From the IMG/VR virus record IMGVR_UViG_3300044974_001280, positions 62,001 through 126,000 of that record: a DNA stretch of 64,000 nt; one strand, given 5' to 3'. The notes under the pieces are model-generated. The model had not been told where the DNA came from. It did no database searches and saw nothing but the letters and a program-made list of their open reading frames with translations. A program made the translations under genes and the position numbers. Shown here in pieces: positions 258 through 64,000 of this stretch. Each line of letters opens with the position of its first letter. The first letter of the stretch is position 1.

Positions 258-1001
258 ATGATTAAAAAGTTTTCTGAATTTAGAAATAGGGTCACACCAG
301 GTCCCGATGACCAACCTGAACTCAATGAAGGAATAGGAGATTGGCTAGGTCAAACCTTTGGCAGTATTTGGGGAGGAGCCAAGGATCTATTGACCAAAAA
401 AATAACAGCTCATCTGCTCAGTAAACTTGGTATCGAGGAGAATAGCATTTTCGCAGAGCTGGTGAGCAAATTCGTTCAGCAAATCCCAATCAGTGACTAT
501 TACGGTATTTTGTTCAATTCTAAACTGAACGCCAAATACTTGGCTCCCAAAATGGCTGAAGCGGCAATGGAATTTATTTCAGGCCAGGGTTACGATGGTA
601 TAGCTCAGTCTTTAGGTTTTAATCGTGATGGATTAATATACCAATTATTAAGGGAGACCTTCACTAACGAGGCAGCTAAATTGAATTTTAAAAAGAATTT
701 AGAAAATTTCTTCCTATCGGTGTTTCAAGGATTTCCATCCACTAGTGCGACTGAATTTGAAAAAAGTTTGACTAGTTCTGAAAAATCCGCCTTAACGAGG
801 CCTCTTCTTCAAACAGCCAAAGATAAAGGAATAAAGATGGATAAATCTGCTAGGGGAGAAGGAAATATTCTGACTAATTTCCTTACTAACATGCAGAATG
901 CTAACCAGGCTAACTCTGCCCAAATTGCATCTTCCTCAACCACTTACAATCAAGGTCTAACTGCTCAGCAGTATGAAGATTTAATAAAATTCAGATCTTA
1001 A
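258..1001 (+). CDS. hypothetical protein, probable head-internal protein
   Basis: 247-aa ORF; N-terminus MIKKFSEF...LNEG resembles T4 internal-protein capsid-targeting sequences. Confidence 0.55.
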   Translation: MIKKFSEFRNRVTPGPDDQPELNEGIGDWLGQTFGSIWGGAKDLLTKKITAHLLSKLGIEENSIFAELVSKFVQQIPISDYYGILFNSKLNAKYLAPKMAEAAMEFISGQGYDGIAQSLGFNRDGLIYQLLRETFTNEAAKLNFKKNLENFFLSVFQGFPSTSATEFEKSLTSSEKSALTRPLLQTAKDKGIKMDKSARGEGNILTNFLTNMQNANQANSAQIASSSTTYNQGLTAQQYEDLIKFRS

Positions 1002-1019
1002 AAATATAACCCCGAATTT

Positions 1020-1376
1020 ATGAACATTAACGACGTTGCCCAAAGAGAAATTTTAGATTTCAAACAGTTCAGAGGAAAGGTAATGGATGACACCTACAAA
1101 CCTTTCGATCCTCAGAATCAGAAGGACTCTTATTCTAGAACAGGACTGCACCCCATCAAAAGGGAACCTGCTTATGATTTCGTAGGGTACGCGGACGCCA
1201 TCTTTTCTCCTGACAAGGCTGGTATTGGCCTGCCTGGTTACAACGCAGGACAAAGCAGACAGTACATCAACGCTATCGGTGGTCCTGGTCTGGCACAAAC
1301 CCCTGCTACTAACGAGTCTGAAAATCAGGAAATTGACGAACCTATAATTTTAGGTCTCAGAGATTTTAGAGGCTAG
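1020..1376 (+). CDS. hypothetical protein
   Basis: 118-aa ORF in operon; similar motifs ILDFKQFRG and ILGLRDFRG at the two ends. Confidence 0.6.
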   Translation: MNINDVAQREILDFKQFRGKVMDDTYKPFDPQNQKDSYSRTGLHPIKREPAYDFVGYADAIFSPDKAGIGLPGYNAGQSRQYINAIGGPGLAQTPATNESENQEIDEPIILGLRDFRG

Positions 1377-1423
1377 GTTTGATTCAAGCCCGAAATTTTT
1401 TTTCATTCTGACGTAAGACGAGC

Positions 1424-2095
1424 ATGGAAAAAATTAGACTCGTTCACATTCTGACTGAATTAGATCACACAAGAGAAATAGCATCCGTAAATTCTCTATC
1501 GGTCTTGCCGAGTGTGGGAATAGAATACATTCAACAGGTAAATCAAAGATACACTGGTGACGATTGGAAGTTAGTTAAAGCTTTATCTCAAAATGAACAT
1601 ACCCGACACGGAGCAGGACATTATGGGGCTTTTCAATCTTTCAAGAAAGCCATTTTGGAAAATTTCACTCCTGATCTGGACGCCTTGATATTATGTGAGT
1701 GTGACTGCGTGCTTGAAGTATCCCCCGAGGCTTTCTTGATTAACGTTAAAAGAGGTTTAGAATTTTGTCAAACACACCAACTAAATTATTTTTCTTTGGG
1801 TGGGAGGTTTGCTTTAGGACATCTTCAATCTCCTATTTTAGAAACAGATCCCAGGTTCGAAGATTTTTACGTCACTAATAAAATTATTCTGGCCCATTGT
1901 ATAGTCTTAACCCCAATAGGCCGAGAATTTTATTTGAATGTACTGCAGGGAGATTCTTGGGACAGTCCAGATCTATGGTTTTTTGAAATCAATTGGAAGC
2001 ACGGCAATGATAGATTTGGTATTTCTTATGAGAGATCAGCCTTCCAGCATGAGGGACTTTCTCTCATTGATAACTGTTGGAAAGACTCACAATAA
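1424..2095 (+). CDS. glycosyltransferase, GT25-like (GT-A fold)
   Basis: GHYGAFQSFKKAI followed by ALILCECDC matches the GT25 pattern GxxGCxxSH...ALILEDD; later LAHCIVL and DLWF match the A-Y-hh and D-h segments. Confidence 0.55.
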   Translation: MEKIRLVHILTELDHTREIASVNSLSVLPSVGIEYIQQVNQRYTGDDWKLVKALSQNEHTRHGAGHYGAFQSFKKAILENFTPDLDALILCECDCVLEVSPEAFLINVKRGLEFCQTHQLNYFSLGGRFALGHLQSPILETDPRFEDFYVTNKIILAHCIVLTPIGREFYLNVLQGDSWDSPDLWFFEINWKHGNDRFGISYERSAFQHEGLSLIDNCWKDSQ

Positions 2096-2794
2096 CTCGA
2101 AATTTCTTTCGATCTCTTTTACGAAAAGATCTTTTGCAATTTTCAAGATACTAGACTCTGAACAAAAGTCGTCCAAAATTTCCATCACAGTCACTCTGGG
2201 TTTAGCTATGCTTCCGTTCGTCTCGAGTAGAATCTCATTAATGATGTATTCATAGGACAAAGAAAAATAGTTATTGTCCAGATCTATTTTCTTCATGATT
2301 ACTGCCTCTTGGGAAGAAATCTTGGCCTTAGACCAAAAGTGACAAAAGATCTCGTCAGTTGACATGTTTCTGATAATCAAAATTCCGCTATTGACGGGAT
2401 CTTTCTCTTTGTGAAAATTAAAGATCTTGATTTTATCTCTGATGTTATCCCAGAGAATAGATCCTATTTCCACATACCCATACAGGGATTCGAGAGCCTC
2501 GTTCACGATATGCAGGATCTGGTCTTTCTCGGTTGTTGTGTAATCCTCTCGATTGATCTCAGTCCAAATCTGATCTTGTCTGATCGATTTAACTGGAAGT
2601 TGTGGCTTCTCTTCCAGGAGCTGGCGAGCGAACTTGAGTTCACTTATCAAATCAAACACATTCTTGATAGCTGGATAGTAATCCTCCCTTTCTATATCTC
2701 TGTTAACTTGTTGGAGGAAATTCAGTAAAACGTATTGTTTGTGCTCAGTGTCAAAAGGTTTTGATAAAAACCAGGTAGATTCCAATAACTCCAT
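2087..2794 (-). CDS. conserved hypothetical protein, resembles a Bacteroidota uncharacterised family
   Basis: 235-aa ORF, TWF..PFDTEHKQYVLLNFLQQVN...YYP; upstream CATATATAAA on the minus strand; family resemblance from memory only. Confidence 0.6.
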   Translation of the reverse strand: MELLESTWFLSKPFDTEHKQYVLLNFLQQVNRDIEREDYYPAIKNVFDLISELKFARQLLEEKPQLPVKSIRQDQIWTEINREDYTTTEKDQILHIVNEALESLYGYVEIGSILWDNIRDKIKIFNFHKEKDPVNSGILIIRNMSTDEIFCHFWSKAKISSQEAVIMKKIDLDNNYFSLSYEYIINEILLETNGSIAKPRVTVMEILDDFCSESSILKIAKDLFVKEIERNFELL

Positions 2795-2855
2795 AATTTA
2801 TCTTTTTACTTCTGTTTATATATGCTGATTAAGATGAGAGTCTGATTTTCTCAGA

Positions 2856-2863
2856 GATATATA
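2856..2863 (+). promoter_or_regulatory. putative late promoter GATATATA
   Basis: Motif 30 nt upstream of ATG 2893; a divergent copy on the minus strand at about 2815-2824. Confidence 0.55.
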
Positions 2864-2892
2864 ACTCAGATCCAAAAATTTACCAGAAAGTT

Positions 2893-3327
2893 ATGAGAAT
2901 CCAAGATTATGGAAGCTATAGTGTCCAGAAGAATAAAAATTTTACCTCTGAGTTTACATTTACCTCGCAGTTGGGTTTTCTCGAGGTGAAAGTTATCAAC
3001 AGGCCGTCGGAGCTTCTTCAATACGATGATCTAGAATGTATTGTAGAATATGAAGCAGCGATTGAAAGAAAAAAAGAAGGGATCCAGGATCTAAATTTCA
3101 AGATTAATCTGATTGAGATGGAATTCAGAGTTGATGGCTATCCAGAGGACCCAGCAGAATATGATTTCGAAATTGTGCCTGGAGAAAATATAGATGCCAA
3201 ACTAGTTAAAATTCAGAAAGAAGAAATACTTATCCCCTCTAACCCCTCTTTTCTACTCTTGGATATGGGCAAATCTATGAGACCAGCCGATTTTAAAATG
3301 ACAGTGCACTTTGGAAAGAAAGACTAA
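2893..3327 (+). CDS. hypothetical protein
   Basis: 144-aa acidic ORF downstream of promoter motif. Confidence 0.6.
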   Translation: MRIQDYGSYSVQKNKNFTSEFTFTSQLGFLEVKVINRPSELLQYDDLECIVEYEAAIERKKEGIQDLNFKINLIEMEFRVDGYPEDPAEYDFEIVPGENIDAKLVKIQKEEILIPSNPSFLLLDMGKSMRPADFKMTVHFGKKD

Positions 3328-4213
3328 CAGGCTAATGCCTTTTTCTGAATACAATGAACTCTTCGAGTCCAATTCGGGCAGACGTCTGAATTTAGGCATA
3401 GTTGGACCTTTGGCCAATTGGTCTATGAAAATCCAGGCCTATCCAGAGCCTAATCATGGCATGATAGGTTATGCCATTCATGAAGACGAAATAGAATTTT
3501 CTTACAAGGATAAGAAGATGAAGGTTCCGAGCAAGTGCTGTCAGGTTAAGAAGAATAAAAATTCTTCCACTATCCATTTCCAGCCAGATCCCAGATGGAT
3601 TGGTCGTTCGGAAAACATAGAACTTCTGTCTGAATTTGCAGACACTTATCTTGAAGAGAAGCTGGGTGCAACGGCCAGAGAAGATGATTTGGTAGCAGGT
3701 GATATAGGCTTGGTCTTAGATTGTTTACACTTGGGGGACAGAGTATCGGAGTGTATATTGAAAAGACCTGGCCACTATGAAATTGAGTTGGCTGATGGTT
3801 CTCTGGTGGAGGTGAAGAAAAATACAGATTCTTTTTTTGACGACCTTAAATTTTATAAAGACTCGAACAAAAAAGAGTGGGACCTAAGATTGAAGAATGG
3901 ATCTGCCCATAAATCGATAGAATTCGTAACCCCCAAATGTCAATTAACAGAAACTGCAAAGACGTTTACCGAGCTTTTTGAAAAACCGATTGTTGCCTAT
4001 TTGATTTCCGTCATGTCCGAAAAAACTGATTCAGACCTGGCTGATCTGGCCCTAAATGATCTGAAAAAAACCATTAGAAGACCTCCTAAAGGGGACCAAA
4101 GATCGGCAGAATACAGAGATCATCAGAGACGGATAGAAGACACTCTCCAGGCCTTAACACACTCTTTTGACTTGCCAGACCTCCAAAGGTTGATCCAAAT
4201 TACCCGGAACTAG
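3311..4213 (+). CDS. hypothetical protein (alternative ATG start at 3335)
   Basis: 300-aa ORF; N-terminus RLMPFSEYNELFES resembles the capsid-targeting-like motif. Confidence 0.6.
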   Translation: MERKTNRLMPFSEYNELFESNSGRRLNLGIVGPLANWSMKIQAYPEPNHGMIGYAIHEDEIEFSYKDKKMKVPSKCCQVKKNKNSSTIHFQPDPRWIGRSENIELLSEFADTYLEEKLGATAREDDLVAGDIGLVLDCLHLGDRVSECILKRPGHYEIELADGSLVEVKKNTDSFFDDLKFYKDSNKKEWDLRLKNGSAHKSIEFVTPKCQLTETAKTFTELFEKPIVAYLISVMSEKTDSDLADLALNDLKKTIRRPPKGDQRSAEYRDHQRRIEDTLQALTHSFDLPDLQRLIQITRN

Positions 4214-4290
4214 AGGTAGAAACTTTCCGTCAACCTTTTCTATAAGAAACTAATCAATGAAATTCTTTAACGATCTTTCATAAGGAAAGA

Positions 4291-5506: not shown

Positions 5507-5507
5507 T

Positions 5508-5840: not shown

Positions 5841-5848
5841 AAATTAAG

Positions 5849-6169: not shown

Positions 6170-6186
6170 AAAAATTCTTTTGGTGA

Positions 6187-12793: not shown

Positions 12794-13462
12794 ATGGCAA
12801 ACCCCCGACTTTATTTAGGCCAGATAGTAGATATTGACGACCCTAGAAAATCTGGTCGAGCCCGAATCAGGGTTTTTGGATTATTTGATGGCTTGGAGCA
12901 TGAAGATATACCCTGGGCAAGTCAGATAAGCGGGGTTTCTTTTGGCAGGGGAGGAGCTGGAACCATCTCCATCCCAAAATTGGGATCTATAGTGGTAGTT
13001 CAGTTCGATGGTCAAAATTATTACAAGATGAATTACTACGGGGAGAAGGACTATGCCCAAGACATGCTGGACGAGATAGCAGATTCCTACGAGGGAGCAC
13101 AGGTCATCATGTATGACACCGAGGCTGAGCCTGGATCTTTAACCCTATTTTACACCAAAAAGAAAGGAGCTGTTTTCTCTTTGGGTGATGCCAAAATTCA
13201 ATTTGATACTCAGGATGGGGGCCAGCTTAGAGTAATTATCGAAATGGGTGGAGATCAAATTAGAATGGAGAATAACAAGGTGATCGTCAACTCCAATAAT
13301 ATTGAGCTGGGTGAAGCTGCGGCTCAGGCTCTCATTAAAGGTAACACTTTCCAAGCCTACTTTAATTCACACACCCATATTGGCAATCTGGGCGCTCCAA
13401 CTTCTCCTCCCGTAGTACCTTCTACTCCAGATCATCTATCCACAGTTTCTAAAACAAGATAA
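12794..13462 (+). CDS. baseplate central spike, gp5 N-terminal OB-fold / P2 gpV-like
   Basis: YLGQIVDIDDPRKSGRARIRVFG...IPWA...IPKLGSIVVVQF (gp5 OB fold); C-terminal FNSHTH (HxH apex motif). Confidence 0.85.
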   Translation: MANPRLYLGQIVDIDDPRKSGRARIRVFGLFDGLEHEDIPWASQISGVSFGRGGAGTISIPKLGSIVVVQFDGQNYYKMNYYGEKDYAQDMLDEIADSYEGAQVIMYDTEAEPGSLTLFYTKKKGAVFSLGDAKIQFDTQDGGQLRVIIEMGGDQIRMENNKVIVNSNNIELGEAAAQALIKGNTFQAYFNSHTHIGNLGAPTSPPVVPSTPDHLSTVSKTR

Positions 13463-16131: not shown

Positions 16132-16142
16132 TTTTCATTGAG

Positions 16143-16150
16143 GATATATA
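16143..16150 (+). promoter_or_regulatory. putative late promoter GATATATA
   Basis: Motif 26 nt upstream of the S1-like gene. Confidence 0.55.
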
Positions 16151-19514: not shown

Positions 19515-19624
19515 CTTATTAATAGGTATTTAACATATATGTCAATCGAGTTTTGGATCTATGACGAAAAGGGCAACAAATCTGTGAAATAGAACACATC
19601 CTTTTTTCCTCCTAATTCAATCGG

Positions 19625-19632
19625 GATATATA
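19625..19632 (+). promoter_or_regulatory. putative late promoter GATATATA
   Basis: Motif 17 nt upstream of gp25 ATG. Confidence 0.55.
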
Positions 19633-46500: not shown

Positions 46501-48927
46501 AGCCCCACCAATTTTTCCCCTAGTTTTCAGAAAGAAAGCCCAGATCCTCGATATCTGACCCACGAGTGGTTGATTCTTCAGGGGGTTCCTCCTCAGTTCC
46601 CAATTGATGATATTTCAAAACAGAAAAGTTATCTGCCGGGCGAGGTTGATTTTCAGAAATTGCGTAGTGGCAATCCTAATTACGCCCTGTACTTTAATTC
46701 ATTCTTTACTGTCTCAACCGCAGATTATCCAGCTCCCTACTACAGCCTGAAATATCAGGGGTACGAATACTTTAGCAACCTCAATTTCAATTATGCCACC
46801 GGTTTTTATGAAACGGTCTTTAGGGGAGTAAAGATAGTACTGAAGAAAAGAAGCAGTGTTACGAACCCCAAATCAGAGCTTGAAAAATACATTATCAACT
46901 ACAGAGGGTATGAAAATTACAATTTCTCTGCCATCCTCAAAGTTGTGCCGGAGGATGATTCTGAAATCCAAAGTCCAGTTAGGTATGAGTTTATTGAAAA
47001 CGTGCAACAAAAATGTGTCCTCTTGGTAGTGTACGTCGTCATTAAAGATTACAGAGCTTTACCTTTGGGGTCGACTGGAGGAACTGGAGGAACACCCTAC
47101 CTGGATTATCTGCTGATGTATTGCATGAGTGACAAGAAAGAGGCCACGGACGTTGGAACAACAGGAGCTACGGGTCCTACTGGATCACCTCTCTACGATA
47201 TTGCTGATATCAAGTTGTCTGCGGCCTTGAATCTCTCCACTACTTCAGACAGTTCAGTTACTCTATTTTCTAATTCTGGAAAAATCTTCACCATTGAAAA
47301 TCCAGATTTTGACACCGATTTAAGAGAAGAGATCAATTTGTTTTACCCAATAGGATCTACCGGGTCCGTCTCCGATACCGGACCTGGTAGTTTCTACGTC
47401 CCCAGTCAGTCTTACACTTACCCCTGGCCAGTTGGAAGATCCCAAAATTTAGTTGATTTTCAAGCTATCGAGCCAGGAGCCTATGAATTCCAAATTCCCT
47501 TTGCGTTCTCCTCGCCAGTTACAATCCCAGTAGGACCAAGATCAGCCTACGCTAATTATCCAGTTTTTCAAGTAGACGGGGGAGAAGATTATTTCGACTT
47601 TATTCTAAAAAGAATTTCCCTATCCCAAATTTATTTGCGTGTTAATAACGAAAGCCCCTATATTAGTTATACTACTTACGATTGGGATCCGATTGCTGAA
47701 AGTACCCTGGTTTCTCAGAATTCTTTTCAAGTTTCTTTTACTGAGCCAACTGCTCTCTATAAACCAACTGGCTTATATCCAGTCAAGAGCTACGAAGGGC
47801 CTCAAACTCTAGGCACTAGTGTTGTTACCAGTTATCAGATTGAAAACGGTGGTTCCGAGCTGGCCAGTGATATTTTAAGGTATGGAGGCGCATACGAACC
47901 TTTGTTTAAGAAGGTGCTCAGATTCAAGGGTGATAAAACGGATTCAATCTCCGGCAACCCAGGGGCAGACATTACTTTCAGAAACTGTACCTTTGCCCCC
48001 GAGCAAGAAGGATTTGGTCTCATAGAAAATCTGGCTTTTTCTAAAGTCTCTCTGGATCAAAATATTCTTCAGGCTTCTCAGAATTTGCCACAAGGACCGG
48101 TGTTTCCTTTAGTGGGTCAATCACCAATTTCCTACAAGAATTTCTCAGTCTTCCTTTCCAGCTGGGATCCTGGCTACTACAATCTTTGGACCTCGGCTAC
48201 AACCCAGAATCCAGTTGCCGGAACTAGATCGATGAAGGAGAACAAAAGTTTTCTGGGTTCAAAGATGATGCAGACCCCCTACACTGTTACCATCTACACT
48301 TTCATCACTCTAGAACTGGTGAGAACATCAGGCAACACCAATGTCGATGCGATTAACACTCAGGCGGTTGCCGCGGTTCCTGCCATTCAAAATTTAAACC
48401 CCTCCACTTCTAACACTGGGGTAGGACAATTAGGAAATTATCTCAGTAATGTTGATTTACCCGTTTTCGATCAAGACATCTTCCCCCAAGTGGAAATCTT
48501 CTGGCAAAGGAACGAAATTTCCAACACCGTCATCGGTTCTATCAGATTGGATAGGATCTTAAGAAGGTATCTGTTAAATTCCGGGGTTAGCCAGGTTTTC
48601 GTCGACAACATGGTGAGCGAGTTTGGATTGGGGAATCCCAACAGCATCTACGACGATATCAACACCTACATTGACCAGAATATAGTTCCTATCTACGAAG
48701 GGATTACTTTTGATCTGTTTGTCAAGAAGACAGGAGAGGCGTTAACAACAACTGAATTATTGGTAAGAGGAGATCTTATTAATCCAGATCGGATCAGATA
48801 TGGTTACTATCAACAAAATAACTACAGATTAACTAAAATCACCGATTTGATTTACTCTTTCGAATATCCTCTAACGGTCGGTCAAAATTATTCCTTGACT
48901 TTCTCCTTCAGAATCCAGAAAATTTAA
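37591..48927 (+). CDS. giant modular adhesin/tail-fibre-like structural protein
   Basis: 3778 aa: repeated Cys modules (CYxY..YxDC..C), Thr/Pro linkers, vWA domain (DISVS MIDAS, GGTN, LIVDG; about 39865-40635), DUF642/CBM-like domain (NLFVNGDF...FGPVLDNV; about 40657-41160), CBM5/12-like [15 protein letters not shown] (45361-45495), non-repetitive C-terminal ~1840 aa from about 43396. Confidence 0.75.
38566..39300 (+). repeat. 18-bp coding tandem repeat, mucin-like (TPTNTQ)n
   Basis: ACTCCTACCAACACCCAG-type units repeated more than 25 times with synonymous variation and interruptions. Confidence 0.95.
42856..43191 (+). repeat. 30-bp coding tandem repeat ([10 protein letters not shown])n
   Basis: CCTACTAACACCCCGACCCCGAGTATCACT-type units recurring with period 30. 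Confidence 0.9.
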
Positions 48928-48941
48928 TTTTTAAGAGTCTG

Positions 48942-48949
48942 AATATATA
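48942..48949 (+). promoter_or_regulatory. putative late promoter variant AATATATA
   Basis: GAATATATACAG 19 nt before ATG 48968; the same 12-mer occurs at 53312 and 6039. Confidence 0.5.
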
Positions 48950-48967: not shown

Positions 48968-50452
48968 ATGCCTACTTTGAACATTCTTAATCTAAATCTG
49001 GGGGATTCCCAAGAAGATATCAGGAACAAGGTTAATGCAAACTTTGAGTCCTTGATCCAAAATGGAGGTGGACCCCAAGGTCTGCAAGGAGAGATTGGAC
49101 CTCAAGGTCCAGTAGGTCCTCAGGGACCTCAGGGTGATCCTGGTCAGCAAGGACTGAGGGGAACTCGTTGGTATGTTCAACCCTCGTTTCCGGCGGGTGG
49201 AACTTCCGATCCCGTAATTGAAGGTGATTATTGGGTAGACACTTTCAATCAGAATTCTATTTTTGAGTACACTGCAGCAGGATGGACAGATACAGGGTTC
49301 GATCTTCAATCCACGGAGGTCTTTACTACTTTAGTCGGAATTTCAGGCCCGAGTGGTTCTAAGAATGCGGTCGTTTTCAACTCCCCTTTTCCTAATTTAA
49401 ACACCCTAGTTTTAAGCGATGCGGTGTCGGTGCCCCAAACCACCAATCCCACCTATGCGAAACTTCTGATCTCAACCAACTCGTCCTCTGATTACCCTCT
49501 CCTGGAATTTTCGAAAACCAACGCCACTGGAGCTGGTACACCACAGGACTACAACAGACACCCACAATTTAGGTGGTTAAACCCCAGCTCTTCCAACTAT
49601 AATTTGCTGTTTACTGTTCCTCAAGACAGCATGGAATTCAGAGCAGGAGGCTCGATGCTAGTTCAAAGCTCCGCCTCTTCCCTTCAGTTTTCTTCAGCCA
49701 ATACTTTGTCTTTAACCTCGGCTGCAACTATGACTGTTACCTCGGCCTCGGTCATGAATTTTTCATCAGGTTCCCAGCCGATGAATTTCAGTTCTCAGAA
49801 CTACAATCTTTCATCATCCTCTTTGAGTTTATCTGTGCCTCTGAGTTTGACCTCCAGTGCAAGTGGCTATGCCATGACTTTTAACAACTCCGGTTCAGGA
49901 TCAGGTCTCTTGTTATCAGGAACATCGACCAGCACTAGTCAGTTTTTGGCCAATTTTGCCTCAGGGGGATCCAGTAAATTCTCAGTTAGGGCGGATGGAA
50001 AGATTTTCGTGTCTCAATTAGGATCTGCTTTTAGATCTCTTTCCTCTACCTATGATAATTCTGCGACTATCTCCGCCACAACTTACTATTATTGGTATTT
50101 GGGAACAAATATTATCCAGACTGGAAACCTTCTTCTTTTCGATACTTCTTCCTCTCCTTCAGATAAGGGACTAGCCCTTCCTGTCGGGGGTACCGTCTCT
50201 AATAGCTGGACTCAGTATCTAGGAAATTATGAATCTATCCAATTAAGAGTTATTAGTACAAACTCGAACAATTTGGTCAAAAGTGTTGCTTTGTGGACAG
50301 GCTCAGGAACCATTAATGCGGGTTCTAACACGGCGGCTACTTTTGCCAGTGGTCAAAGTTTTGTCGATTTCACCATCATTAGGCTCTCTTCCGATACTGA
50401 TTATCAAGTTTATTATTCAACCTGTGGTGGACTCTGCGGTAAATTAGCATAA
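48968..50452 (+). CDS. tail fibre-like protein with short collagen segment
   Basis: LGDSQEDIRNKVNANF attachment motif, (Gly-X-Y) run GPQGLQGEIGPQGPVGPQGPQGDPGQQGLRG, Ser-rich beta region. Confidence 0.7.
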   Translation: MPTLNILNLNLGDSQEDIRNKVNANFESLIQNGGGPQGLQGEIGPQGPVGPQGPQGDPGQQGLRGTRWYVQPSFPAGGTSDPVIEGDYWVDTFNQNSIFEYTAAGWTDTGFDLQSTEVFTTLVGISGPSGSKNAVVFNSPFPNLNTLVLSDAVSVPQTTNPTYAKLLISTNSSSDYPLLEFSKTNATGAGTPQDYNRHPQFRWLNPSSSNYNLLFTVPQDSMEFRAGGSMLVQSSASSLQFSSANTLSLTSAATMTVTSASVMNFSSGSQPMNFSSQNYNLSSSSLSLSVPLSLTSSASGYAMTFNNSGSGSGLLLSGTSTSTSQFLANFASGGSSKFSVRADGKIFVSQLGSAFRSLSSTYDNSATISATTYYYWYLGTNIIQTGNLLLFDTSSSPSDKGLALPVGGTVSNSWTQYLGNYESIQLRVISTNSNNLVKSVALWTGSGTINAGSNTAATFASGQSFVDFTIIRLSSDTDYQVYYSTCGGLCGKLA

Positions 50453-50453
50453 C

Positions 50454-52562
50454 ATGTCTTTCAATTCAAAATACATTTTTCCAGGGGACGACAAGAACGA
50501 AATCCTGTCCAAGATTAATTCTAATTTTGCCCAAATCTATTTTAATGCGATAGGAAGTCCAGGACCGTTGGGAGAATTTGGACCCACGGGTATGATTGGA
50601 CCTGTGGGATTAGACGGTTTACCTGGAGCGACAGGTTCGCCTGCAGCAAGGTGGTTTTTTTCTCCTGAGCCCCCATTATCCACAGAATCTTCAACTGATG
50701 ACATCTGGGTTAATATTGGGATCACTGGATTTCAAAGTGTCTATTTCTATGATGGCACCAATTGGGTTGATACTGGAGAAAGTATTCTGCAGGACTCTGA
50801 ATTTGAAGCAATCACCGGAGTATCGGGACCAGGTGGAAGCACAACTCATAATAGCATTGTCTTCCCAGGACCTTCGGCCTCTGATTACAGCCTAGTTATT
50901 TCTGATGCTGTTGGAACTACCTCCAATGTCAATCCGAACCTCTCGAAACTAATGGTAAGTACGGCTCCTGTGGTTAATATAAAAGTTGGTTCTTTTTTGG
51001 CAGGAGGGGTTGTTTTTTATGTTAATCCTGCTGGTAATGGGGGTTTGGTCTGTGCGCCAAACAACCTGAATACTACTTATGCTTGGGGATGCGCTGGAAC
51101 TAATATTTCTGGTACATCTTCAGCCTTAGGTACAGGAGCAGCAAATACAAATTTGATTTTATTTGGGTGTGCTACTAGACCTATTGCCGCCAGCGTCTGT
51201 GCAGATCTTTCTCTTAATGGATTTTCCGACTGGTATCTTCCTAGTTACGATGAAATGTTTTTAATGTATCAAGAACTACAGCCTTTAGACCCTGCTTCTT
51301 TTGCTGGTACTTTTTGGACAAGTACACAGTTAAACCCCGGACTGGCTAGTGTTTTAAATTTTGGTGTCTCAGGATTTTCAAATAAATCAAATTCCAGACT
51401 GGTGAGGCCAGTAAGAACTTTTACATTAAATGACATTGGAACTGTTCAATATCCGATTTTAGGGTTCGATAAAACCTTTGTAGGATCTGTCTCCATTCCA
51501 TCTTTTAATTGGACTGTTCCAACTGCAGAATCTTATGATATCACTTTTAGCAATCCGGGAGAAACTAGAATTTTATTAGGAACTACTGGTAGTTTTTCTG
51601 CTACCGGGGGATCTGGGGAATCTGTGATACTAGCCGGCAATACTTTTGTGCAACTGACTTCTCAAAATCAAATCACTTTTGAATCTTCTACGGGAGCCAC
51701 TGGCAGCTTGACCCTGGCTACACCCTCTACGATTTTGATGAATTCTGCTAACAAGATACTGACTAGTAACAGTTTGTCGTATCAGAATCTGGCCGATTCA
51801 TCCGGTCTGACCGCAGATGCCAGCACCTTGATCGACGTCTCGGGAAATCAGGGATTGAATATTCAAATTTTAGGTTCTTCGACCGGAACCCCTATTTATA
51901 CTTTTAGAAATCCTGCGGGGTATAGAATTTTAGAAAGTAGAAGCAACAATCTAACGATGATTGGTGAAACTGGCCCCTCTGGTTCCGCTTCTGGCTGCCT
52001 AGTGAAGAAAATAGATGTTGTTGATTCATATAGTCTGAATGGAAGAAGCGGAAGCCAATTTTCTGCTAATGGATTTTTGAATAATTATGCTTCATTAGAA
52101 ATAAATGGTAATAATTCTGATGTTATTTGTATTAAGGCTTATTACGCATACTTGTTAACTCCAGATGCAAACACTCCCACCGCAAACGGAGAATACTATT
52201 CCATTTATTTACAGTTAAGTGGGTTTCAAAATATTACAACAGTTGATCCTGTAAATCCTGGTATGGGTATTTCTTTTTCTAATACATCAAGGAGAATTTT
52301 CGACATTTTTCTAGAGGATGAGTCGGGAATTTGGCCGTCTGGCTACATATCTTTTGGTGGCATTAGAACTGTTTATGCAGGTGGAAGTTCCTCTGTATCT
52401 ATTAGTAATTCATCTTTCAGATGCTACCATATTAGATTAATTTTTATAAACAACGAGTCTATCTTTTATCAGTTTAACTATTCGGGCACTGCCAATAGAT
52501 GCGGTTATATCCCTTATGTTTATACCAATCCAGTTTCTGGAGGGGGCGGAATTGGTAGCTAA
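50454..52562 (+). CDS. tail fibre-like paralogue with collagen segment and inserted DUF1566 (Lcl/CLec-like) domain
   Basis: PGDDKNEILSKINSNF, collagen run, then GGVVFYV...GFSDWYLPSYDEM...FWTST...VRPVRTF (about 50976-51422). Confidence 0.75.
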   Translation: MSFNSKYIFPGDDKNEILSKINSNFAQIYFNAIGSPGPLGEFGPTGMIGPVGLDGLPGATGSPAARWFFSPEPPLSTESSTDDIWVNIGITGFQSVYFYDGTNWVDTGESILQDSEFEAITGVSGPGGSTTHNSIVFPGPSASDYSLVISDAVGTTSNVNPNLSKLMVSTAPVVNIKVGSFLAGGVVFYVNPAGNGGLVCAPNNLNTTYAWGCAGTNISGTSSALGTGAANTNLILFGCATRPIAASVCADLSLNGFSDWYLPSYDEMFLMYQELQPLDPASFAGTFWTSTQLNPGLASVLNFGVSGFSNKSNSRLVRPVRTFTLNDIGTVQYPILGFDKTFVGSVSIPSFNWTVPTAESYDITFSNPGETRILLGTTGSFSATGGSGESVILAGNTFVQLTSQNQITFESSTGATGSLTLATPSTILMNSANKILTSNSLSYQNLADSSGLTADASTLIDVSGNQGLNIQILGSSTGTPIYTFRNPAGYRILESRSNNLTMIGETGPSGSASGCLVKKIDVVDSYSLNGRSGSQFSANGFLNNYASLEINGNNSDVICIKAYYAYLLTPDANTPTANGEYYSIYLQLSGFQNITTVDPVNPGMGISFSNTSRRIFDIFLEDESGIWPSGYISFGGIRTVYAGGSSSVSISNSSFRCYHIRLIFINNESIFYQFNYSGTANRCGYIPYVYTNPVSGGGGIGS

Positions 52563-56956: not shown

Positions 56957-57517
56957 ATGGCGATACTAAATGTCAGATCGAATAGTTTTTATTTCAATTT
57001 CCCGAAAGGATTTTTTCCCGGCTCGGTAGAGACCAAGTGGGTTGATTATCTGAAAAAACAGCCCACCCCCTACGATACCCTGACCTCTTATATGAACAGC
57101 AGTATTCAATCTGTCTCTTTTCCGACCATGAACATTGATTTAGTGTCACAAACCAGAAATCTCGGCAAACAGATTAATTACCAGAGTGCAACCCCTGTGC
57201 AGGATTTATTCTCCAGAGATTTCTCTGTTTCTTTTAGGATCAGTGAAGGATTTGTGAATTACTTTATCATGTTGGAAACTGTCTTAGATAAACTGGCCTT
57301 TCAAAACGATGCCCTGTTCACTCCTATCTTACCTCTTCGAATCTTAGATAATGAGGGGGGAGTAGTTATTTCAGTTCTTTTTAAAGAAGTAACTCTTACC
57401 TCAGTCAACAACATTGATTTAAATTACACCGCTAATGCCCCTACAGTTTCAACTTTTACCGTGGGCTTTAAATGTAATTTTATGGAACTGAATTCAGAAG
57501 TCCAGAAAACAAATTAG
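56957..57517 (+). CDS. tail tube-fold protein (gp19/gp3-like tail completion)
   Basis: 186 aa; IQSVSFP...FSVSFRISE...NY...LRILDN.G....VLFKEV.LTS...IDLNY...TFTVGF follows the tube/terminator fold pattern. Confidence 0.5.
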   Translation: MAILNVRSNSFYFNFPKGFFPGSVETKWVDYLKKQPTPYDTLTSYMNSSIQSVSFPTMNIDLVSQTRNLGKQINYQSATPVQDLFSRDFSVSFRISEGFVNYFIMLETVLDKLAFQNDALFTPILPLRILDNEGGVVISVLFKEVTLTSVNNIDLNYTANAPTVSTFTVGFKCNFMELNSEVQKTN

Positions 57518-57524
57518 ATATATA
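57517..57524 (+). promoter_or_regulatory. putative late promoter GATATATA
   Basis: 19 nt before ATG 57543. Confidence 0.55.
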
Positions 57525-57542: not shown

Positions 57543-57788
57543 ATGAAAAAATTCTCAGAACTAGCCAGAGTAAATGAAATGAAATACGGTCAGCCGATGT
57601 ACGGGGAAAGTGACCTGAAGCAGCATATGAAAAATCTTCTAGTTGCCGCCTCGGGTAACGATCAAAGGGTCTTAAATGATATAGTGGATTGTCTTACTGA
57701 TGAGCAGATGAAAAAATGCTACGATAATTTGGTGAAAGTTTATAATTACACGGGTAAAGTTGGGGAAGCAGTCCCAGCAAACCTTTAA
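57543..57788 (+). CDS. small hypothetical protein, probable head-internal protein
   Basis: MKKFSELARVNE N-terminus, close to the T4 CTS MKTYQEFIAE pattern. Confidence 0.55.
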   Translation: MKKFSELARVNEMKYGQPMYGESDLKQHMKNLLVAASGNDQRVLNDIVDCLTDEQMKKCYDNLVKVYNYTGKVGEAVPANL

Positions 57789-57798
57789 ATCTGTTTAG

Positions 57799-58485: not shown

Positions 58486-58550
58486 AAAGGGGTGAAACTT
58501 TTTATTATTCTCTCCATTAAAAGATCAAACTTAAAAAAATTAAAGAAATT

Positions 58551-59549: not shown

Positions 59550-59567
59550 TTTTTAATGTGTTGGGGT

Positions 59568-59602
59568 AAGAGGAGAACCTGGGGAGGTTCTCCTCTTTTT
59601 TT
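59568..59602 (+). terminator. Rho-independent terminator after gp32
   Basis: 13-bp stem AAGAGGAGAACCT / AGGTTCTCCTCTT, GGGG loop, followed by a T-run. Confidence 0.85.
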
Positions 59603-59616
59603 AATTTACAGGATCT

Positions 59617-60681: not shown

Positions 60682-60884
60682 TGTTCATCAACTACACACC
60701 AGAGGAGAAACCAAAATCACCTCCCAAACTAAAATTTCCTTGTACCTTGCACGAGGTTCAAGATCTGGACAATTTAGAAAACATTGAAGAAAACTTTCAA
60801 ATGCCAAAACCTGTCAAAAAAGTAAATCGCTGCCAGATGGTAGAGCTAGGAAAAAATAAAAAGAGCAAAGGAGGCTTATTTTAA
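60681..60884 (+). CDS. small hypothetical protein
   Basis: 67 aa, TAATG-coupled to primase. Confidence 0.5.
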   Translation: MFINYTPEEKPKSPPKLKFPCTLHEVQDLDNLENIEENFQMPKPVKKVNRCQMVELGKNKKSKGGLF

Positions 60885-60888
60885 CACT

Positions 60889-61329
60889 ATGTCGTCAGAA
60901 AAAGATTTTGTCAAACTATTCGAAGAGGAAAGAGCCGATTGGAGAGAAAAAATTCAGGGGATTTCGTTCAGTCTTAAAAACATTCATACCGTGGCGGAAG
61001 CCCAGATCGATCTTTTTACTACTCGACAAATCCTGATTGAATATGGCTTTAAGTTAGCAACCATCGTTACCAAACTGTCCTCCAAAGAAAGACAGGAGAG
61101 GGCTAGAAAAATGAAGGATTACCAGGAGAACAAAGATGTTCGGTATGGTTCTAATGATTTAAAAACAATGATAGAGGGTGAGGTGGCCGAGATTAATCAG
61201 AAAATTGAACTAGTTGAGGGCCATAGAAAATATATTGATCAAACAGTTCAAACTGTAGACCATATGCTATATGGGATCCGTCAAAGAATAGCCTTGGAAG
61301 ATTACCTCAGGGGTAATACAATCAAATAA
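60889..61329 (+). CDS. uvsY: UvsY-like recombination mediator
   Basis: 146-aa helical protein directly before UvsW; RYGSNDLKTMIEG...LYGIRQRIALEDY parallels the T4 UvsY C-terminal half. Confidence 0.65.
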   Translation: MSSEKDFVKLFEEERADWREKIQGISFSLKNIHTVAEAQIDLFTTRQILIEYGFKLATIVTKLSSKERQERARKMKDYQENKDVRYGSNDLKTMIEGEVAEINQKIELVEGHRKYIDQTVQTVDHMLYGIRQRIALEDYLRGNTIK

Positions 61330-61338
61330 GGAAAAGAC

Positions 61339-62862: not shown

Positions 62863-62871
62863 ACAAGTTGG

Positions 62872-62879
62872 GATATATA
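62872..62879 (+). promoter_or_regulatory. putative late promoter GATATATA
   Basis: 19 nt before ATG 62898. Confidence 0.55.
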
Positions 62880-62897
62880 AATCAAAAAATCAGATTT

Positions 62898-63452
62898 ATG
62901 ACTCCCAGATTAAAAAACTTTTCCATGTTTTCTGAGGCAATAAACAGAGAAAGAAGCAGGTTTAGATCCAATTTTGATAAAGAGGACGATTGGAGTAAGT
63001 TCGAAGAAATAGAGAGAAGGATAGAGGATCGATATTCAAGAAAAGAATCGGAAACGGGAATTGGTGAATTTTCAGATTCGGGAGCCAGAGCAAGATTTCA
63101 AGCTATGGCAGAAGATCCGAGTGGAGCTCCGCTAAGATTGGTCCGAATGGGCCTGTCCCTTGTTCAGAAGGTGGCTAAATCTATTGTTGATGTTTTTAAA
63201 ATGCCTTTTAGAGGTGGGGATTCTCTGGAGAGTCTTAAGAGACAAAAGAAAGATATGCTAGAAAAATGGGGTGAAACCATTACAAAAAGTGGCAGAAACA
63301 CAAGAGAAGACTATGAGGATTTCTATAGTAGAGCCTACGATAGTGGCAGAAGAACATTTGGAGATGATTTTGATCTAGATTCTCCCAGCTCTGAAGAAGG
63401 CAGGGTGTATTCAAGTTACATTAAAGGGGCCAGAAGATTTTACGATATTTGA
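62898..63452 (+). CDS. hypothetical protein, probable head-internal protein
   Basis: ATG 62898 (MTPRLKNFSMFSEAINRE) preferred over GTG 62859; highly charged. Confidence 0.55.
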   Translation: MTPRLKNFSMFSEAINRERSRFRSNFDKEDDWSKFEEIERRIEDRYSRKESETGIGEFSDSGARARFQAMAEDPSGAPLRLVRMGLSLVQKVAKSIVDVFKMPFRGGDSLESLKRQKKDMLEKWGETITKSGRNTREDYEDFYSRAYDSGRRTFGDDFDLDSPSSEEGRVYSSYIKGARRFYDI

Positions 63453-63454
63453 GC

Positions 63455-64000
63455 ATGATTTATACCTACACACAATATATGGAATTAAATGAAGGAGGGG
63501 CTGCTATTGGCAGTTCTAGAAAGATCCGAGAGGATGAAGTGGCCAAAACTTTGACCCACTTAGGGGAAGCCCTTTTTCCCTTGCTGGGCGATGGAAAATT
63601 AAACAGGGACTTTTTGCTCATTGGCAGCATTGGAAAAAAAGAAAGTCCAGATGACACTTCCGGGGACGTGGATTTGGGAGTTTCTAAACCCTTCCTGGCC
63701 CAAAAATGGGGTGTTCCTGAATCCAAGGTGTTGGATGTAATGACCGAGAAACTGAAGGACCAACTCCCCGACATTTTGGGTTACAAACCGGAGATCAAAA
63801 TGTTTAAAGGGATCAACATAGTCAGCGTTGAATGGCCCATTGAGGGGAACATCAAGAACGGCACGGTTCAACTTGATCTGATTCCAATTGCGGATATGGA
63901 TTGGGCTAAATTTATTTTTTACTCCCCGGACCAGAGAAAAAAAGAATCCAAGTATAAATCTGCCCACAGGAATTGGCTTTTCCAGGCCATTCTTTCGGCC
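63455..64000 (+). CDS. Pol-beta-superfamily nucleotidyltransferase, truncated by window end
   Basis: Manually translated open frame MIYTYTQYMELNEGGAAIG...LLIGSIGKKESPDDTSGDVDLGV...VQLDLI...SAHRNWLFQAILSA; hGS-x(n)-DhDh plus third Asp; no stop in window so absent from the ORF track. Confidence 0.75.
   Translation, partial: MIYTYTQYMELNEGGAAIGSSRKIREDEVAKTLTHLGEALFPLLGDGKLNRDFLLIGSIGKKESPDDTSGDVDLGVSKPFLAQKWGVPESKVLDVMTEKLKDQLPDILGYKPEIKMFKGINIVSVEWPIEGNIKNGTVQLDLIPIADMDWAKFIFYSPDQRKKESKYKSAHRNWLFQAILSA

What the first reader, a model, noticed from the sequence alone, without database searches (positions are those of the whole stretch)
258..63500. Family of T4 capsid-targeting-sequence-like N-termini marking putative injected proteins
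Seen: unrelated ORFs start with K/R-x-F/Y-x-E/Q-F/Y followed by (L/I/V)NE or FES: MIKKFSEF...LNEG (258), RLMPFSEYNELFES (3311), MKKFSELARVNE (57543), RLKNFSMFSEAINRE (62898), MIYTYTQYMELNEGG (63455); weaker in MRIQDYGSY (2893). Most lie just downstream of the late-promoter motif. Established: T4 internal proteins use a 10-aa CTS (MKTYQEFIAE) that is removed after Glu by the gp21 protease. Inference: a shared address tag loads a varied cargo into the head for injection into the host.
Basis: partly seen in the sequence, partly recalled or inferred. Interest (0 to 1): 0.6.

Follow-up and report, generated by a model that had tools for sequence, protein, structure and literature searches.

The report
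T4-like capsid address tags, jumbo phage
A 230-kb uncultured phage of Bacteroidota puts a short T4-like "address and cut-here" leader on about twenty unrelated proteins, and its own head scaffold is built of 14 copies of the same motif, so its packaged (probably injected) proteins can be read from sequence alone.

Summary
The window is bases 62001-126000 of a 230,445-bp IMG/VR phage whose capsid protein is about 43% identical to that of the Lak megaphages; it probably belongs to the 'moraphages'.

- **Motif.** N-termini carry a two-part leader: hydrophobic-[KQ]-[KNS]-F/Y-x-x-F/Y/W, then 0-16 residues later [LIVM]-[N/F/x]-Glu.
- **Enrichment.** It is 4-12-fold enriched at N-termini against interior positions and against composition-preserving shuffles. 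The enrichment repeats in a complete relative and in 61 related loci.
- **Likeness to T4.** A matrix trained only on relatives ranks T4 IPIII, IPII and IPI 2nd-4th of 125 T4 ORFs.
- **Protease and scaffold.** The genome encodes a gp21-family (S77) protease with the T4 catalytic His and Ser. It is fused to a scaffold of 14 tandem Y-S-E-Y-L-A-E units, the same shape as the tag.
- **Capsid protein.** Its propeptide carries the same modules.
- **Cargo.** The proteins are unrelated to each other: adenylate kinase, an ATP-grasp enzyme, a Pol-beta-fold nucleotidyltransferase and five peptidoglycan enzymes. Most sit behind the RGATATATA motif shared with structural genes.

Targeting and cleavage are well supported by sequence. 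Packaging and injection remain untested. This is a new variant of a known kind.

The parts
258..329 (+). Tag of ORF 258-1001 (247 aa): MIKKFSEF, a Pro-rich linker, then LNE|G. The predicted propeptide is 24 aa.
   Evidence: The matrix gives p=0.0002 and the strict score is 7.9. Of 47 orthologues, 35 keep the aromatic pair. The linker to [VILM]NE varies in length and the conserved Gly-rich body starts after the Glu.
206..214 (+). Promoter-like AGATATATA before ORF 258.
   Evidence: The consensus RGATATATA lies a median 27 nt before the ATG of 47 genes, among them the portal, protease, sheath and baseplate genes.
1050..1070 (+). ILDFKQF inside the N-terminus of ORF 1020-1376. It is tag-like and a doubtful member.
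   Evidence: The matrix gives p=0.010. The aromatic pair is kept in 46 of 46 orthologues, but a following phi-x-Glu occurs in only 1 of 46.
2893..2919 (+). RGATATATA lies at 2855-2863.
   Evidence: It is not significant by the matrix (p=0.16). Of 26 orthologues, 24 keep an aromatic pair but only 2 have phi-x-Glu after it.
3335..3367 (+). Tag of ORF 3335-4213 (292 aa): MPFSEYNELFE|S. The predicted propeptide is 11 aa.
   Evidence: The matrix gives p=0.0056 and the strict score is 8.5. The G002 orthologue begins ...VLNFKDFILNE|SDSGG. LFE is the commonest P3-P1 in the ORF 63455 family.
57543..57578 (+). Tag of ORF 57543-57788 (81 aa): MKKFSELARVNE|M. The second aromatic residue is replaced by Leu. 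RGATATATA lies at 57516-57524.
   Evidence: The matrix gives p=0.019. The G002 orthologue begins MKKFTDLKQLNE|MKYGQP, and the body is 71% identical from the residue after the Glu.
60889..60924 (+). Possible variant tag MSSEKDFVKLFE|E of ORF 60889-61329.
   Evidence: The matrix gives p=0.0022 and the strict score is 7.1. The G002 orthologue keeps DF-x-K-I-F-E. It is uncertain.
62898..62936 (+). Tag of ORF 62898-63452 (184 aa): MTPRLKNFSMFSE|A, with a second Glu at aa 18. RGATATATA lies at 62871-62879.
   Evidence: The matrix gives p=0.0027 but the strict score is low. The G002 orthologue begins MNIKSFDDFIAE|N, the same shape as the T4 CTS, while the bodies align only from aa 80.
63455..63493 (+). 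Tag of ORF 63455-64387, which runs off the window (310 aa): MIYTYTQYMELNE|GG. The cargo has a Pol-beta-like nucleotidyltransferase fold.
   Evidence: Of 120 homologues, 104 have the conserved GG[AS]A start, preceded by LFE (71), LNE (13), IFE (13) or INE (3). Of those 104, 102 have an aromatic pair in the leader. In the AF2 model (pLDDT 91.3) aa 1-20 are low-confidence and lie outside the fold. Foldseek matches Pol beta, lambda and TdT.
12794..13462 (+). Context: a gp5-like baseplate hub protein of only 222 aa. Only its N-terminal part matches (aa 5-77 of phrog_430), and no lysozyme domain was identified in it.
   Evidence: This bears on why tagged peptidoglycan enzymes might be carried in the virion. 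That link is inference.

Best explanation
The N-termini are capsid targeting sequences of the T4 type, and each has two separable modules.

- **Address module.** This is a short helix-prone element, hydrophobic-[KQ]-[KNS]-F/Y-x-[E/D/Q]-F/Y/W. It mimics one unit of the phage's own scaffold. The scaffold is the C-terminal part of the prohead protease ORF and holds 14 tandem 14-residue repeats, each starting Y-S-E-Y-L-A-E. The capsid protein propeptide carries the same element. The address would dock the protein onto the scaffold core while the prohead is built.
- **Cut module.** This is [LIVM]-[N/F/x]-Glu, placed 0-16 residues further on. The gp21-family serine protease would cut after the Glu inside the prohead. 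The leader and the scaffold repeats (cut into 14-mers) would leave, and the mature cargo would stay in the head with the DNA.

The cargo would be delivered with the DNA at infection. It includes an adenylate kinase, an ATP-grasp enzyme, a Pol-beta-fold nucleotidyltransferase, five peptidoglycan-binding or peptidoglycan-cutting proteins and many unknowns.

**Shown by sequence:** the motif and its enrichment, its likeness to the T4 CTS, the protease with its catalytic residues, the repeat scaffold, the conservation pattern, and the shared promoter-like motif.

**Inferred:** docking on the scaffold, cleavage, retention in the head, and injection.
For: 1. **Enrichment.** The motif is enriched at N-termini in this genome. 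The same holds in a 99%-complete relative, G002, where the regex hits 20 times against 1.6 expected. G002 also has 25 tagged N-termini at p<=0.01 against 3.4 expected, and 14 against 2.2+/-1.5 in the shuffle test. It also holds in 61 related loci, 164 against 7.5.
2. **Cross-validation on T4.** A clade-trained matrix ranks IPIII, IPII and IPI 2nd-4th of 125 T4 ORFs. The T4 record gives MKTYQEFIAE for ipII and ipIII and MKTFKEFTST for ipI.
3. **Cut site.** A phi-x-Glu lies within 14 aa of the first aromatic residue in 12/17 tagged N-termini against 69/261 controls (P 3e-4). In G002 the figures are 18/25 against 81/319 (P 4e-6). There the commonest spacing is that of T4 Y-Q-E-F-I-A-E, P2 is Asn in 11/18, and P1' is mostly S, A or G.
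4. **Protease.** Peptidase_S77 scores above its cut-off. T4 His85 and Ser140 align to invariant His and Ser. Conserved VYE|S and C-x-NE|S follow the domain.
5. **Scaffold.** There are 14 in-register repeats, with 9-14 motif matches (12-14 in nearly all) in 50 of the 51 relatives' protease ORFs. All 14 exceed the interior 99th percentile of the tag matrix, and 10 exceed the 99.9th.
6. **Capsid protein.** It is in the Gp23 family. The only Glu residues in its first ~140 residues are at 6, 8, 18 and 43, three of them in INE|A, IIE|Q and LNE|S. Two sit behind aromatic pairs. The start aligns with the T4 gp23 propeptide, and the LNE|SA stretch is conserved in the six relatives' capsid proteins inspected.
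7. **Conservation stops at the cut.** In 104 of 120 homologues of ORF 63455 the leader varies but keeps the aromatic pair and [LI][FN]E, and an invariant GGAAI follows at once. Five adenylate kinase orthologues whose N-termini could be read all keep F-x-x-F-L-[NL]-E|RE[LI]PD before the kinase domain.
8. **Unrelated cargo.** Only one paralogous pair is found among the tagged bodies.
9. **Co-regulation.** ATATATA lies within 80 nt upstream of 10/24 tagged genes against 37/254 others (P 0.002). The same motif precedes the portal, protease, sheath and baseplate genes.
10. **Charge.** Tagged proteins are more basic, median pI 7.8 against 5.6.
11. **Tagged versus untagged enzymes.** Tagged peptidoglycan enzymes are paralogues of untagged lysis-type genes.
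12. **Literature.** The T4 CTS targets diverse internal proteins to the scaffolding core (PMC3012670). T4-type and phiKZ-type prohead proteases all cut after Glu (PMC5694885).
Against: - There are no virion data. The phage is uncultured, so packaging, cleavage and injection are untested.
- Under the strict null, about 4-5 of the 18 best-scoring N-termini are expected by chance. Single members therefore cannot be called from score alone; this applies to 57543, 62898, 60889 and the ClpB-like protein.
- Exact adjacency of the aromatic pair and phi-x-Glu is not itself enriched (3 against 1.05).
- About 30% of tagged N-termini lack a nearby phi-x-Glu.
- The ClpB-like homologue in relative G005 has no tag.
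- A more distant relative (LR756500.1, 44% capsid identity) has no tagged genes next to its capsid gene.
- The AF2 model of the protease-scaffold ORF is of low confidence (pLDDT 51.8), so the helical repeat is only suggested.
- The docking test could not be run.
- An adenylate kinase or an 821-aa AAA+ protein is unusual head cargo.
Confidence: 0.72

Rival explanations
1. The motif is an extended recognition site or propeptide of the prohead protease, carried by head-core or structural proteins. These are processed or degraded during maturation, as T4 gp22, gp67 and gp68 are. On this reading the motif is neither an address nor a mark of injected cargo.
For: The scaffold repeats and the capsid protein propeptide carry the same modules. 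The three or four genes just after the capsid gene are conserved across the clade and may be core proteins.
Against: The spacing between the aromatic pair and the Glu site varies from 0 to 16 residues within one orthologous family, which fits two separable modules better than one recognition site. Tagged proteins include folded enzymes whose conserved bodies begin right after the cut. Such bodies are not expected to be degraded.
Confidence: 0.15
2. The motif is a short linear motif that binds some other hub. Candidates are the phage's ClpA/ClpB-like unfoldase or a sliding clamp. Its purpose would be unfolding, turnover or recruitment rather than capsid loading.
For: The genome encodes an 821-aa ClpB-like AAA+ protein. 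Motif copies also occur internally and at a few C-termini. T4 clamp-binding tails are also short and aromatic; this last point is my own knowledge.
Against: This reading does not explain the Glu-ending site, with conservation starting exactly after it. Nor does it explain the likeness to the scaffold repeats and the capsid propeptide, or to the T4 CTS. C-terminal enrichment is weak: 6 against 4.8 here and 12 against 6.1 in G002.
Confidence: 0.07
3. The pattern is a by-product of composition or translation initiation. A-rich and T-rich codons after the start codon favour K, N, I and F in a host without Shine-Dalgarno sites.
For: N-termini here often begin MKK or MKN, and leaders are A-rich.
Against: Shuffling residues 2-30 within each protein keeps composition yet never reaches the observed counts in 200 trials. 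The i/i+3 aromatic spacing and the following Glu site are positional. The pattern is conserved in orthologues whose other leader residues differ.
Confidence: 0.03
4. The motif is an export or periplasm-targeting signal for cell-wall enzymes.
For: Five tagged proteins have peptidoglycan-binding or peptidoglycan-hydrolase domains.
Against: The tag has no hydrophobic core and no lipobox. ATP-dependent cytoplasmic enzymes carry the same tag: adenylate kinase, ATP-grasp and the nucleotidyltransferase.
Confidence: 0.03

Closest known systems
T4 capsid targeting sequence (CTS) of internal proteins IPI, IPII and IPIII (and Alt), removed by the gp21 prohead protease
   Same: Both are N-terminal leaders of 10-25 aa on otherwise unrelated proteins. 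The core is [K]-x-[YF]-x-E-[F], followed by [IL]-x-Glu and a cut after the Glu. Both genomes have a gp21-family protease. The T4 IPs score 2nd-4th of 125 T4 ORFs with the matrix from this clade. The role in T4 is described in PMC3012670 and PMC5694885.
   Different: T4 has a handful of tagged proteins, while this genome has roughly 15-25. The cargo here includes recognisable enzymes. P2 is mostly Asn or Phe (LNE, LFE) rather than Ala. The distance between address and cut site is variable. The host is Bacteroidota, and the capsid protein is only distantly related to gp23. Nothing has been tested at the bench.
T4 prohead core: gp21 protease and gp22 scaffold, two separate genes
   Same: Both have an S77 protease with the same catalytic His and Ser. 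In both, the scaffold is rich in phi-x-Glu sites and is cut to small peptides. T4 gp22 also begins ...EQLIAE|A.
   Different: Here protease and scaffold are one 676-aa ORF. The scaffold part is 14 near-perfect 14-residue repeats, each a copy of the tag-like unit, and 50 of the 51 relatives' protease ORFs examined carry such repeats (9-14 motif matches). I found no description of such a repeat scaffold in the papers searched.
Propeptides of head and ejection proteins in giant phages phiKZ, 201phi2-1 and SPN3US
   Same: These are jumbo phages with many head-internal proteins processed after Glu by a T4-related protease. Their propeptides are thought to target proteins to the prohead (PMC5694885).
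   Different: Their cut motif is A/S/G-x-Glu, and most propeptides are over 100 aa with no shared short tag. Here the tags are short and share a consensus, as in T4.
Encapsulin cargo-loading peptides
   Same: Both are short terminal peptides that load diverse enzymes into an HK97-fold shell. This comparison rests on my own knowledge.
   Different: Encapsulin peptides bind the shell itself, are usually C-terminal, and are not removed. No scaffold or protease is involved.

Membership tests
T4-type capsid targeting sequence (CTS) | A short leader at the extreme N-terminus of otherwise unrelated proteins | tested here: met
   The motif starts within the first 12-14 residues, 19 times against 1.5 expected. 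The bodies share no similarity except for one pair.
T4-type capsid targeting sequence (CTS) | Sequence likeness to MKTYQEFIAE | tested here: met
   The matrix trained on this clade ranks T4 IPIII, IPII and IPI 2nd-4th of 125 ORFs. Exact-shape examples are F-S-D-F-L-I-E (adenylate kinase), F-C-N-F-L-N-E, and F-D-D-F-I-A-E in G002.
T4-type capsid targeting sequence (CTS) | The leader ends in a hydrophobic-x-Glu site of the prohead protease | tested here: met
   The site is present in 12/17 and 18/25 tagged N-termini, against about 26% of controls. In 104 of 120 homologues of ORF 63455 it is present, with conservation starting at P1'. About 30% of tagged N-termini lack it.
T4-type capsid targeting sequence (CTS) | A gp21-family (Peptidase_S77) prohead protease with catalytic His and Ser in the same genome | tested here: met
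   The Pfam score is 33.5 bits against a cut-off of 27. His and Ser align with T4 H85 and S140 and are invariant in relatives. The residue numbers come from my own knowledge.
T4-type capsid targeting sequence (CTS) | The tag brings the protein into the prohead core and is cut off there | not testable with these tools
   This needs virion mass spectrometry or a tag-reporter packaging assay.
T4-type capsid targeting sequence (CTS) | The cargo is ejected into the host with the DNA | not testable with these tools
   This is inferred from T4 only (PMC3012670).
Gp23-type major capsid protein with a cleaved N-terminal propeptide (context) | The Gp23 fold family, with a propeptide bearing Glu-ending sites | tested here: met
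   The Pfam Gp23 match has E 2.4e-39 and starts at aa 96. Sites INE6, IIE18 and LNE43 are present, and there is no further Glu through at least residue 140 (the stretch inspected). Cleavage itself is not testable.

The most novel reading that the evidence does not exclude
The address half of the tag is a free-standing copy of the scaffold's own repeat unit. Cargo would be loaded by homotypic co-assembly: tag, capsid propeptide and 14 scaffold repeats all use the same aromatic helix. This would answer what a T4-type CTS binds. It would also let the whole packaged and injected protein set of uncultured jumbo phages (moraphages, perhaps Lak relatives) be read from sequence. That set would include enzymes such as an adenylate kinase, a nucleotidyltransferase and wall hydrolases, delivered ready-made into the host.
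Probability: 0.35. Interest if true: 0.8.

Novelty: new variant of a known kind. Interest (0 to 1): 0.66.

Why it matters
If the reading is right, three things follow.

- **Predicting packaged proteins.** A simple sequence rule predicts which proteins an uncultured jumbo phage carries in its head and probably injects. For huge phages known only from metagenomes this cannot otherwise be learned.
- **Mechanism of the CTS.** The protease-scaffold fusion with 14 tag-like repeats gives a concrete, testable mechanism for how a T4-type CTS finds the prohead core. That question is left open in the T4 papers consulted, which say only that the CTS takes proteins into the scaffolding core.
- **Cargo.** The predicted cargo list suggests that these phages arrive with ready-made enzymes: wall hydrolases alongside a gp5-like hub protein in which no lysozyme domain was identified, a nucleotidyltransferase, and an adenylate kinase.

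The tag could also serve as a packaging handle for engineering once a relative is in culture.

Tried and rejected
- **Database look-ups.** Megablast of the window's first 8 kb against phage records found nothing. A second 100-base query was a wasted call. Pfam found nothing for most cargo.
- **Motif discovery.** The first EM script timed out. Uncapped EM drifted to a diffuse motif covering 90% of the sequences and was discarded. The capped version was used.
- **Strict regex.** A pattern requiring the aromatic pair to abut phi-x-Glu is not enriched (3 against 1.05). The two modules are therefore treated as separable.
- **C-terminal tags.** Enrichment is weak (6 against 4.8; 12 against 6.1 with P 0.02), so no claim is made.
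- **Complex prediction.** It gives no evidence either way.
- **AF2 of the protease-scaffold ORF.** The model has pLDDT 51.8. The repeat region is drawn as long helices, but confidence is too low to lean on.
- **ClpB-like protein as cargo.** Its own tag is weak (p 0.02), and the G005 homologue lacks one. It is left as possible.
- **Distant relative LR756500.1.** The capsid propeptide is similar, but the neighbouring genes are not tagged, so the reach of the system beyond this clade is open. Lak phages were not analysed, because reading them would need a recoded stop codon that I did not establish.
- **Atlas leads.** The leads for ORF 3335 (Rep_trans, score 0.85) are too weak to use.
- **Finding orthologues.** Single-protein pattern scans for the adenylate kinase and the ClpB-like protein found almost only near-identical copies. 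Whole-record searches of five relatives were used instead.

Full report
**What the window is**

The window is bases 62001-126000 of a 230,445-bp IMG/VR virus record. Nearly all genes are on the + strand. The window holds a T4-like baseplate and tail module, with a gp6-like wedge, a gp5-like hub, gp25/gp53-like proteins, fibres and a 3778-aa ORF.

Just upstream of the window lie three head genes:
- a likely portal gene (assigned from its size and position only; Pfam found no family for it);
- a 676-aa ORF with a Peptidase_S77 (T4 gp21) domain;
- a Gp23-family capsid protein.

The closest cultured-name relatives by capsid protein are the Prevotella Lak megaphages and a 462-kb uncultured phage, at about 43% identity. 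IMG/VR holds at least 80 relatives with 70-85% capsid identity. Size, predicted host phylum and gene content (DnaJ, ClpA/B-like protein, prohead core protease) fit the recently named freshwater 'moraphages'. That paper does not discuss capsid targeting (PMC12619734).

All the quoted N-termini are present. There are two small corrections. The ORF given as 3311 (TTG) more likely starts at the ATG at 3335. ORF 62898 is the ATG within a GTG-started frame.

A crude gene call of the whole genome (280 ORFs) shows about 28 similar N-termini, on both strands.

Statistics:
- A capped EM motif search on the first 25 residues returns I-K-N-F-[SK]-E-F-[LR]. Its likelihood is well above shuffled N-termini and interior segments.
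- A descriptive regex starts in the first 12 residues 19 times against 1.5 expected from the interior rate.
- To avoid circularity I trained a position matrix only on relatives, using the genes just after their capsid gene. In this genome it gives 11 N-termini at p<=0.001 (0.3 expected) and 24 at p<=0.01 (2.8 expected).
- That matrix rewards Met. I therefore repeated the test without the upstream columns, without the three training orthologues, and against shuffles of residues 2-30 of each protein. Eighteen N-termini score >=6 against 4.5+/-2.1, and nine score >=8 against 1.8+/-1.3. No shuffle of 200 reaches the observed counts.

The family is therefore real, at about 4-6-fold over a strict null. 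Roughly a quarter of the borderline calls will be chance.

**Replication**

I fetched a 99%-complete relative, G002 (270,629 bp, capsid 73% identical), and analysed it the same way. The regex hits 20 times against 1.6 expected. Twenty-five N-termini are tagged at p<=0.01 against 3.4 expected. Fourteen score >=8 against 2.2+/-1.5 in the shuffle test. In 61 related loci around the capsid gene the regex hits 164 N-termini against 7.5 expected. Those are largely orthologues and so are not independent.

**Is it T4 CTS-like?**

The T4 record gives MKTYQEFIAE for ipII and ipIII and MKTFKEFTST for ipI. The matrix trained on this clade ranks these three 2nd-4th among 125 ORFs of half the T4 genome.

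After the aromatic pair comes a hydrophobic-x-Glu:
- In this genome it lies within 14 residues in 12/17 tagged N-termini, against 69/261 others (P 3e-4).
- In G002 the figures are 18/25 against 81/319 (P 4e-6).
- The commonest spacing there is exactly that of T4: aromatic-x-x-aromatic-hydrophobic-x-Glu. P2 is Asn in 11/18, and P1' is mostly Ser, Ala or Gly.

T4-type and phiKZ-type prohead proteases all cut after Glu (PMC5694885). The [L/I]-x-Glu rule for T4 is from my own knowledge.

**The protease, the scaffold and the capsid protein**

The S77 domain aligns with T4 gp21, and the residues at T4 His85 and Ser140 are invariant. Directly after the domain come the conserved sites VYE|S and C-x-NE|S. 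They recall gp21 self-processing.

The rest of the ORF is the surprise. It holds 14 tandem 14-residue repeats, each beginning Y-S-E-Y-L-A-E. That is an aromatic pair followed by Leu-Ala-Glu, the same shape as the tags and as T4's Y-Q-E-F-I-A-E. Fifty of the 51 relatives' protease ORFs examined carry 9-14 matches to the repeat motif (12-14 in nearly all). All 14 repeats exceed the 99th percentile of interior positions under the tag matrix, and 10 exceed the 99.9th. AF2 draws the repeat region as long helices, but at low confidence.

The capsid protein starts MKLINE|AEIFDTWAPIIE|Q and later has YCHYHSLNE|SA. These include the only Glu residues in its first ~140 residues. The start aligns with the T4 gp23 propeptide, and the LNE|SA stretch is conserved in the six relatives' capsid proteins inspected.

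The same two modules thus occur in three places: the scaffold, the capsid propeptide that must meet the scaffold, and the tags.

**Conservation pattern**

For ORF 63455, 120 homologues (46-93% identical) were recovered. In 104 of them a variable leader keeps the aromatic pair (102/104). It ends in LFE (71), LNE (13), IFE (13) or INE (3), and an invariant GGAAI follows at once. Conservation starts exactly at the predicted new N-terminus.

The AF2 model of this protein (pLDDT 91.3) puts residues 1-20 outside the fold at low confidence. The body resembles Pol beta, lambda and TdT-type nucleotidyltransferases. It has an invariant Gly-Ser ... Asp-x-Asp.

The adenylate kinase has a 22-residue add-on before its P-loop domain. 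All five orthologues whose N-termini could be read keep F-x-x-F-L-[NL]-E|RE[LI]PD.

Orthologues of ORF 258 keep the pair and a [VILM]NE site, with a linker of very variable length. The G002 orthologues of ORFs 3335 and 62898 have textbook tags, although the bodies align only from residue 60-80.

ORFs 1020 and 2893 keep an aromatic pair but almost never a following Glu site. I treat them as doubtful.

**Cargo and regulation**

The tagged bodies share no similarity, apart from one paralogous pair with a repeat domain.

Recognisable cargo:
- an adenylate kinase and a RimK-type ATP-grasp enzyme;
- a GH24 lysozyme and two PG_binding_1 proteins;
- a GH19-like paralogue of the untagged PG_binding_1 plus GH19 protein that I take to be the endolysin;
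- a paralogue of a second untagged 200-aa gene of unknown function next to that endolysin candidate (no Pfam family);
- the nucleotidyltransferase;
- possibly a ClpB-like AAA+ protein.

The window's gp5-like hub protein is only 222 aa, and only its N-terminal part matches; no lysozyme domain was identified in it. Virion-borne wall enzymes would therefore make sense. That link is inference.

Tagged proteins are more basic than the rest, with median pI 7.8 against 5.6.

A promoter-like RGATATATA lies a median 27 nt before 47 genes, among them the portal, protease, sheath and baseplate genes. ATATATA lies within 80 nt upstream of 10/24 tagged genes against 37/254 others (P 0.002). More tagged genes are second in such operons.

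**Mechanism and rivals**

The best reading is a T4-type CTS with an address module and a cut module. I propose that the address works by mimicking the scaffold repeat.

- The main rival is that the motif is only an extended protease site on core proteins. The variable spacing between the modules argues against this, and so do the folded, conserved enzyme bodies.
- Composition or translation bias is excluded by the shuffle tests.
- An export signal does not fit the ATP-dependent cytoplasmic enzymes.
- Binding to another hub does not explain the Glu site, the scaffold likeness or the T4 likeness.

No tool here can show packaging, cleavage or injection.

**Verdict**

The system is a new variant of a known kind. 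It has the logic of the T4 CTS and gp21. It differs in that it lies in a distant Bacteroidota jumbo-phage clade and has a much larger, enzyme-rich cargo set. It also has a protease-scaffold fusion made of tag-like repeats, which I did not find described in the papers searched.

Noticed in passing
G000:C1:51463-53493 (L002:3464-5494), about 8.5 kb upstream of the window: The prohead protease (S77) is fused to a scaffold-like region of 14 tandem 14-residue repeats, each starting Y-S-E-Y-L-A-E (42-bp DNA period). Fifty of 51 relatives' protease ORFs carry 9-14 matches to the repeat motif (12-14 in nearly all). Each repeat is a tag-like unit with a Leu-Ala-Glu site.
   Followed up: yes
window 206-214, 2855-2863, 16142-16150, 19624-19632, 48941-48949, 57516-57524, 62871-62879 and others; 47 genes genome-wide: A promoter-like RGATATATA with no visible -35 element lies a median 27 nt before the ATG of structural and tagged genes. 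In five genes, four of them tagged (for example the adenylate kinase and the GH24 lysozyme), the motif ends only 4 nt before the ATG. That suggests leaderless or near-leaderless mRNAs.
   Followed up: partly
window 63455-64000 (gene ends at genome 126387; L124:655-1584): The cargo protein has a confident AF2 model (pLDDT 91.3). Its fold resembles Pol beta, lambda and TdT nucleotidyltransferases, with an invariant GS...DxD. It belongs to a family of more than 300 phage proteins with no Pfam family. Another gene caller starts it at Met9, which would remove the tag. Orthologues argue for the first ATG.
   Followed up: partly
window 12794-13462: The gp5-like baseplate hub protein is only 222 aa, and only its N-terminal part matches a known family (aa 5-77 of phrog_430); no lysozyme domain was identified in it. 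Five tagged proteins elsewhere in the genome carry peptidoglycan-binding or peptidoglycan-hydrolase domains.
   Followed up: partly
window 37591-48927: A single 3778-aa ORF lies in a stretch with strongly negative GC skew (-0.18 to -0.20 over 36-44 kb). It is followed by two ORFs with collagen-like Gly-x-y runs (48968-50452, 50454-52562). These are presumably fibre proteins.
   Followed up: no
G000:C1:166327-168792 (-): The ClpB-like AAA+ protein lacks the usual N-domain. It begins with a weak tag (LRLFE|S) and has two more motif copies near its C-terminus (aa 689 and 703). The homologue in relative G005 has neither.
   Followed up: partly
G000:C1:147039-149174 (-): Two untagged ORFs (217 aa and 73 aa) are 72% and 90% identical to parts of the tagged repeat-domain protein at 148157-148939. 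They look like partial duplications or decayed copies. Short low-scoring ORFs with repeated 'PTHRLGCP' lie nearby.
   Followed up: no
G000:C1:162987-163481 (-), 133330-133806, 183636-183821; G002 152352, 202905, 252163: A few small proteins end, rather than begin, with a strong copy of the motif (for example ...ILSFKDFIKKTRK). C-terminal enrichment overall is weak (P 0.02 in G002, not significant here).
   Followed up: partly
L125 (LR756500.1, 462 kb, 25% G+C): In this more distant relative the capsid protein propeptide is alike (MIKLINEAEI...) and the protease ORF is also long (632 aa) with a few Y-x-x-Y-V-x-E units. The genes beside the capsid gene are not tagged.
   Followed up: partly
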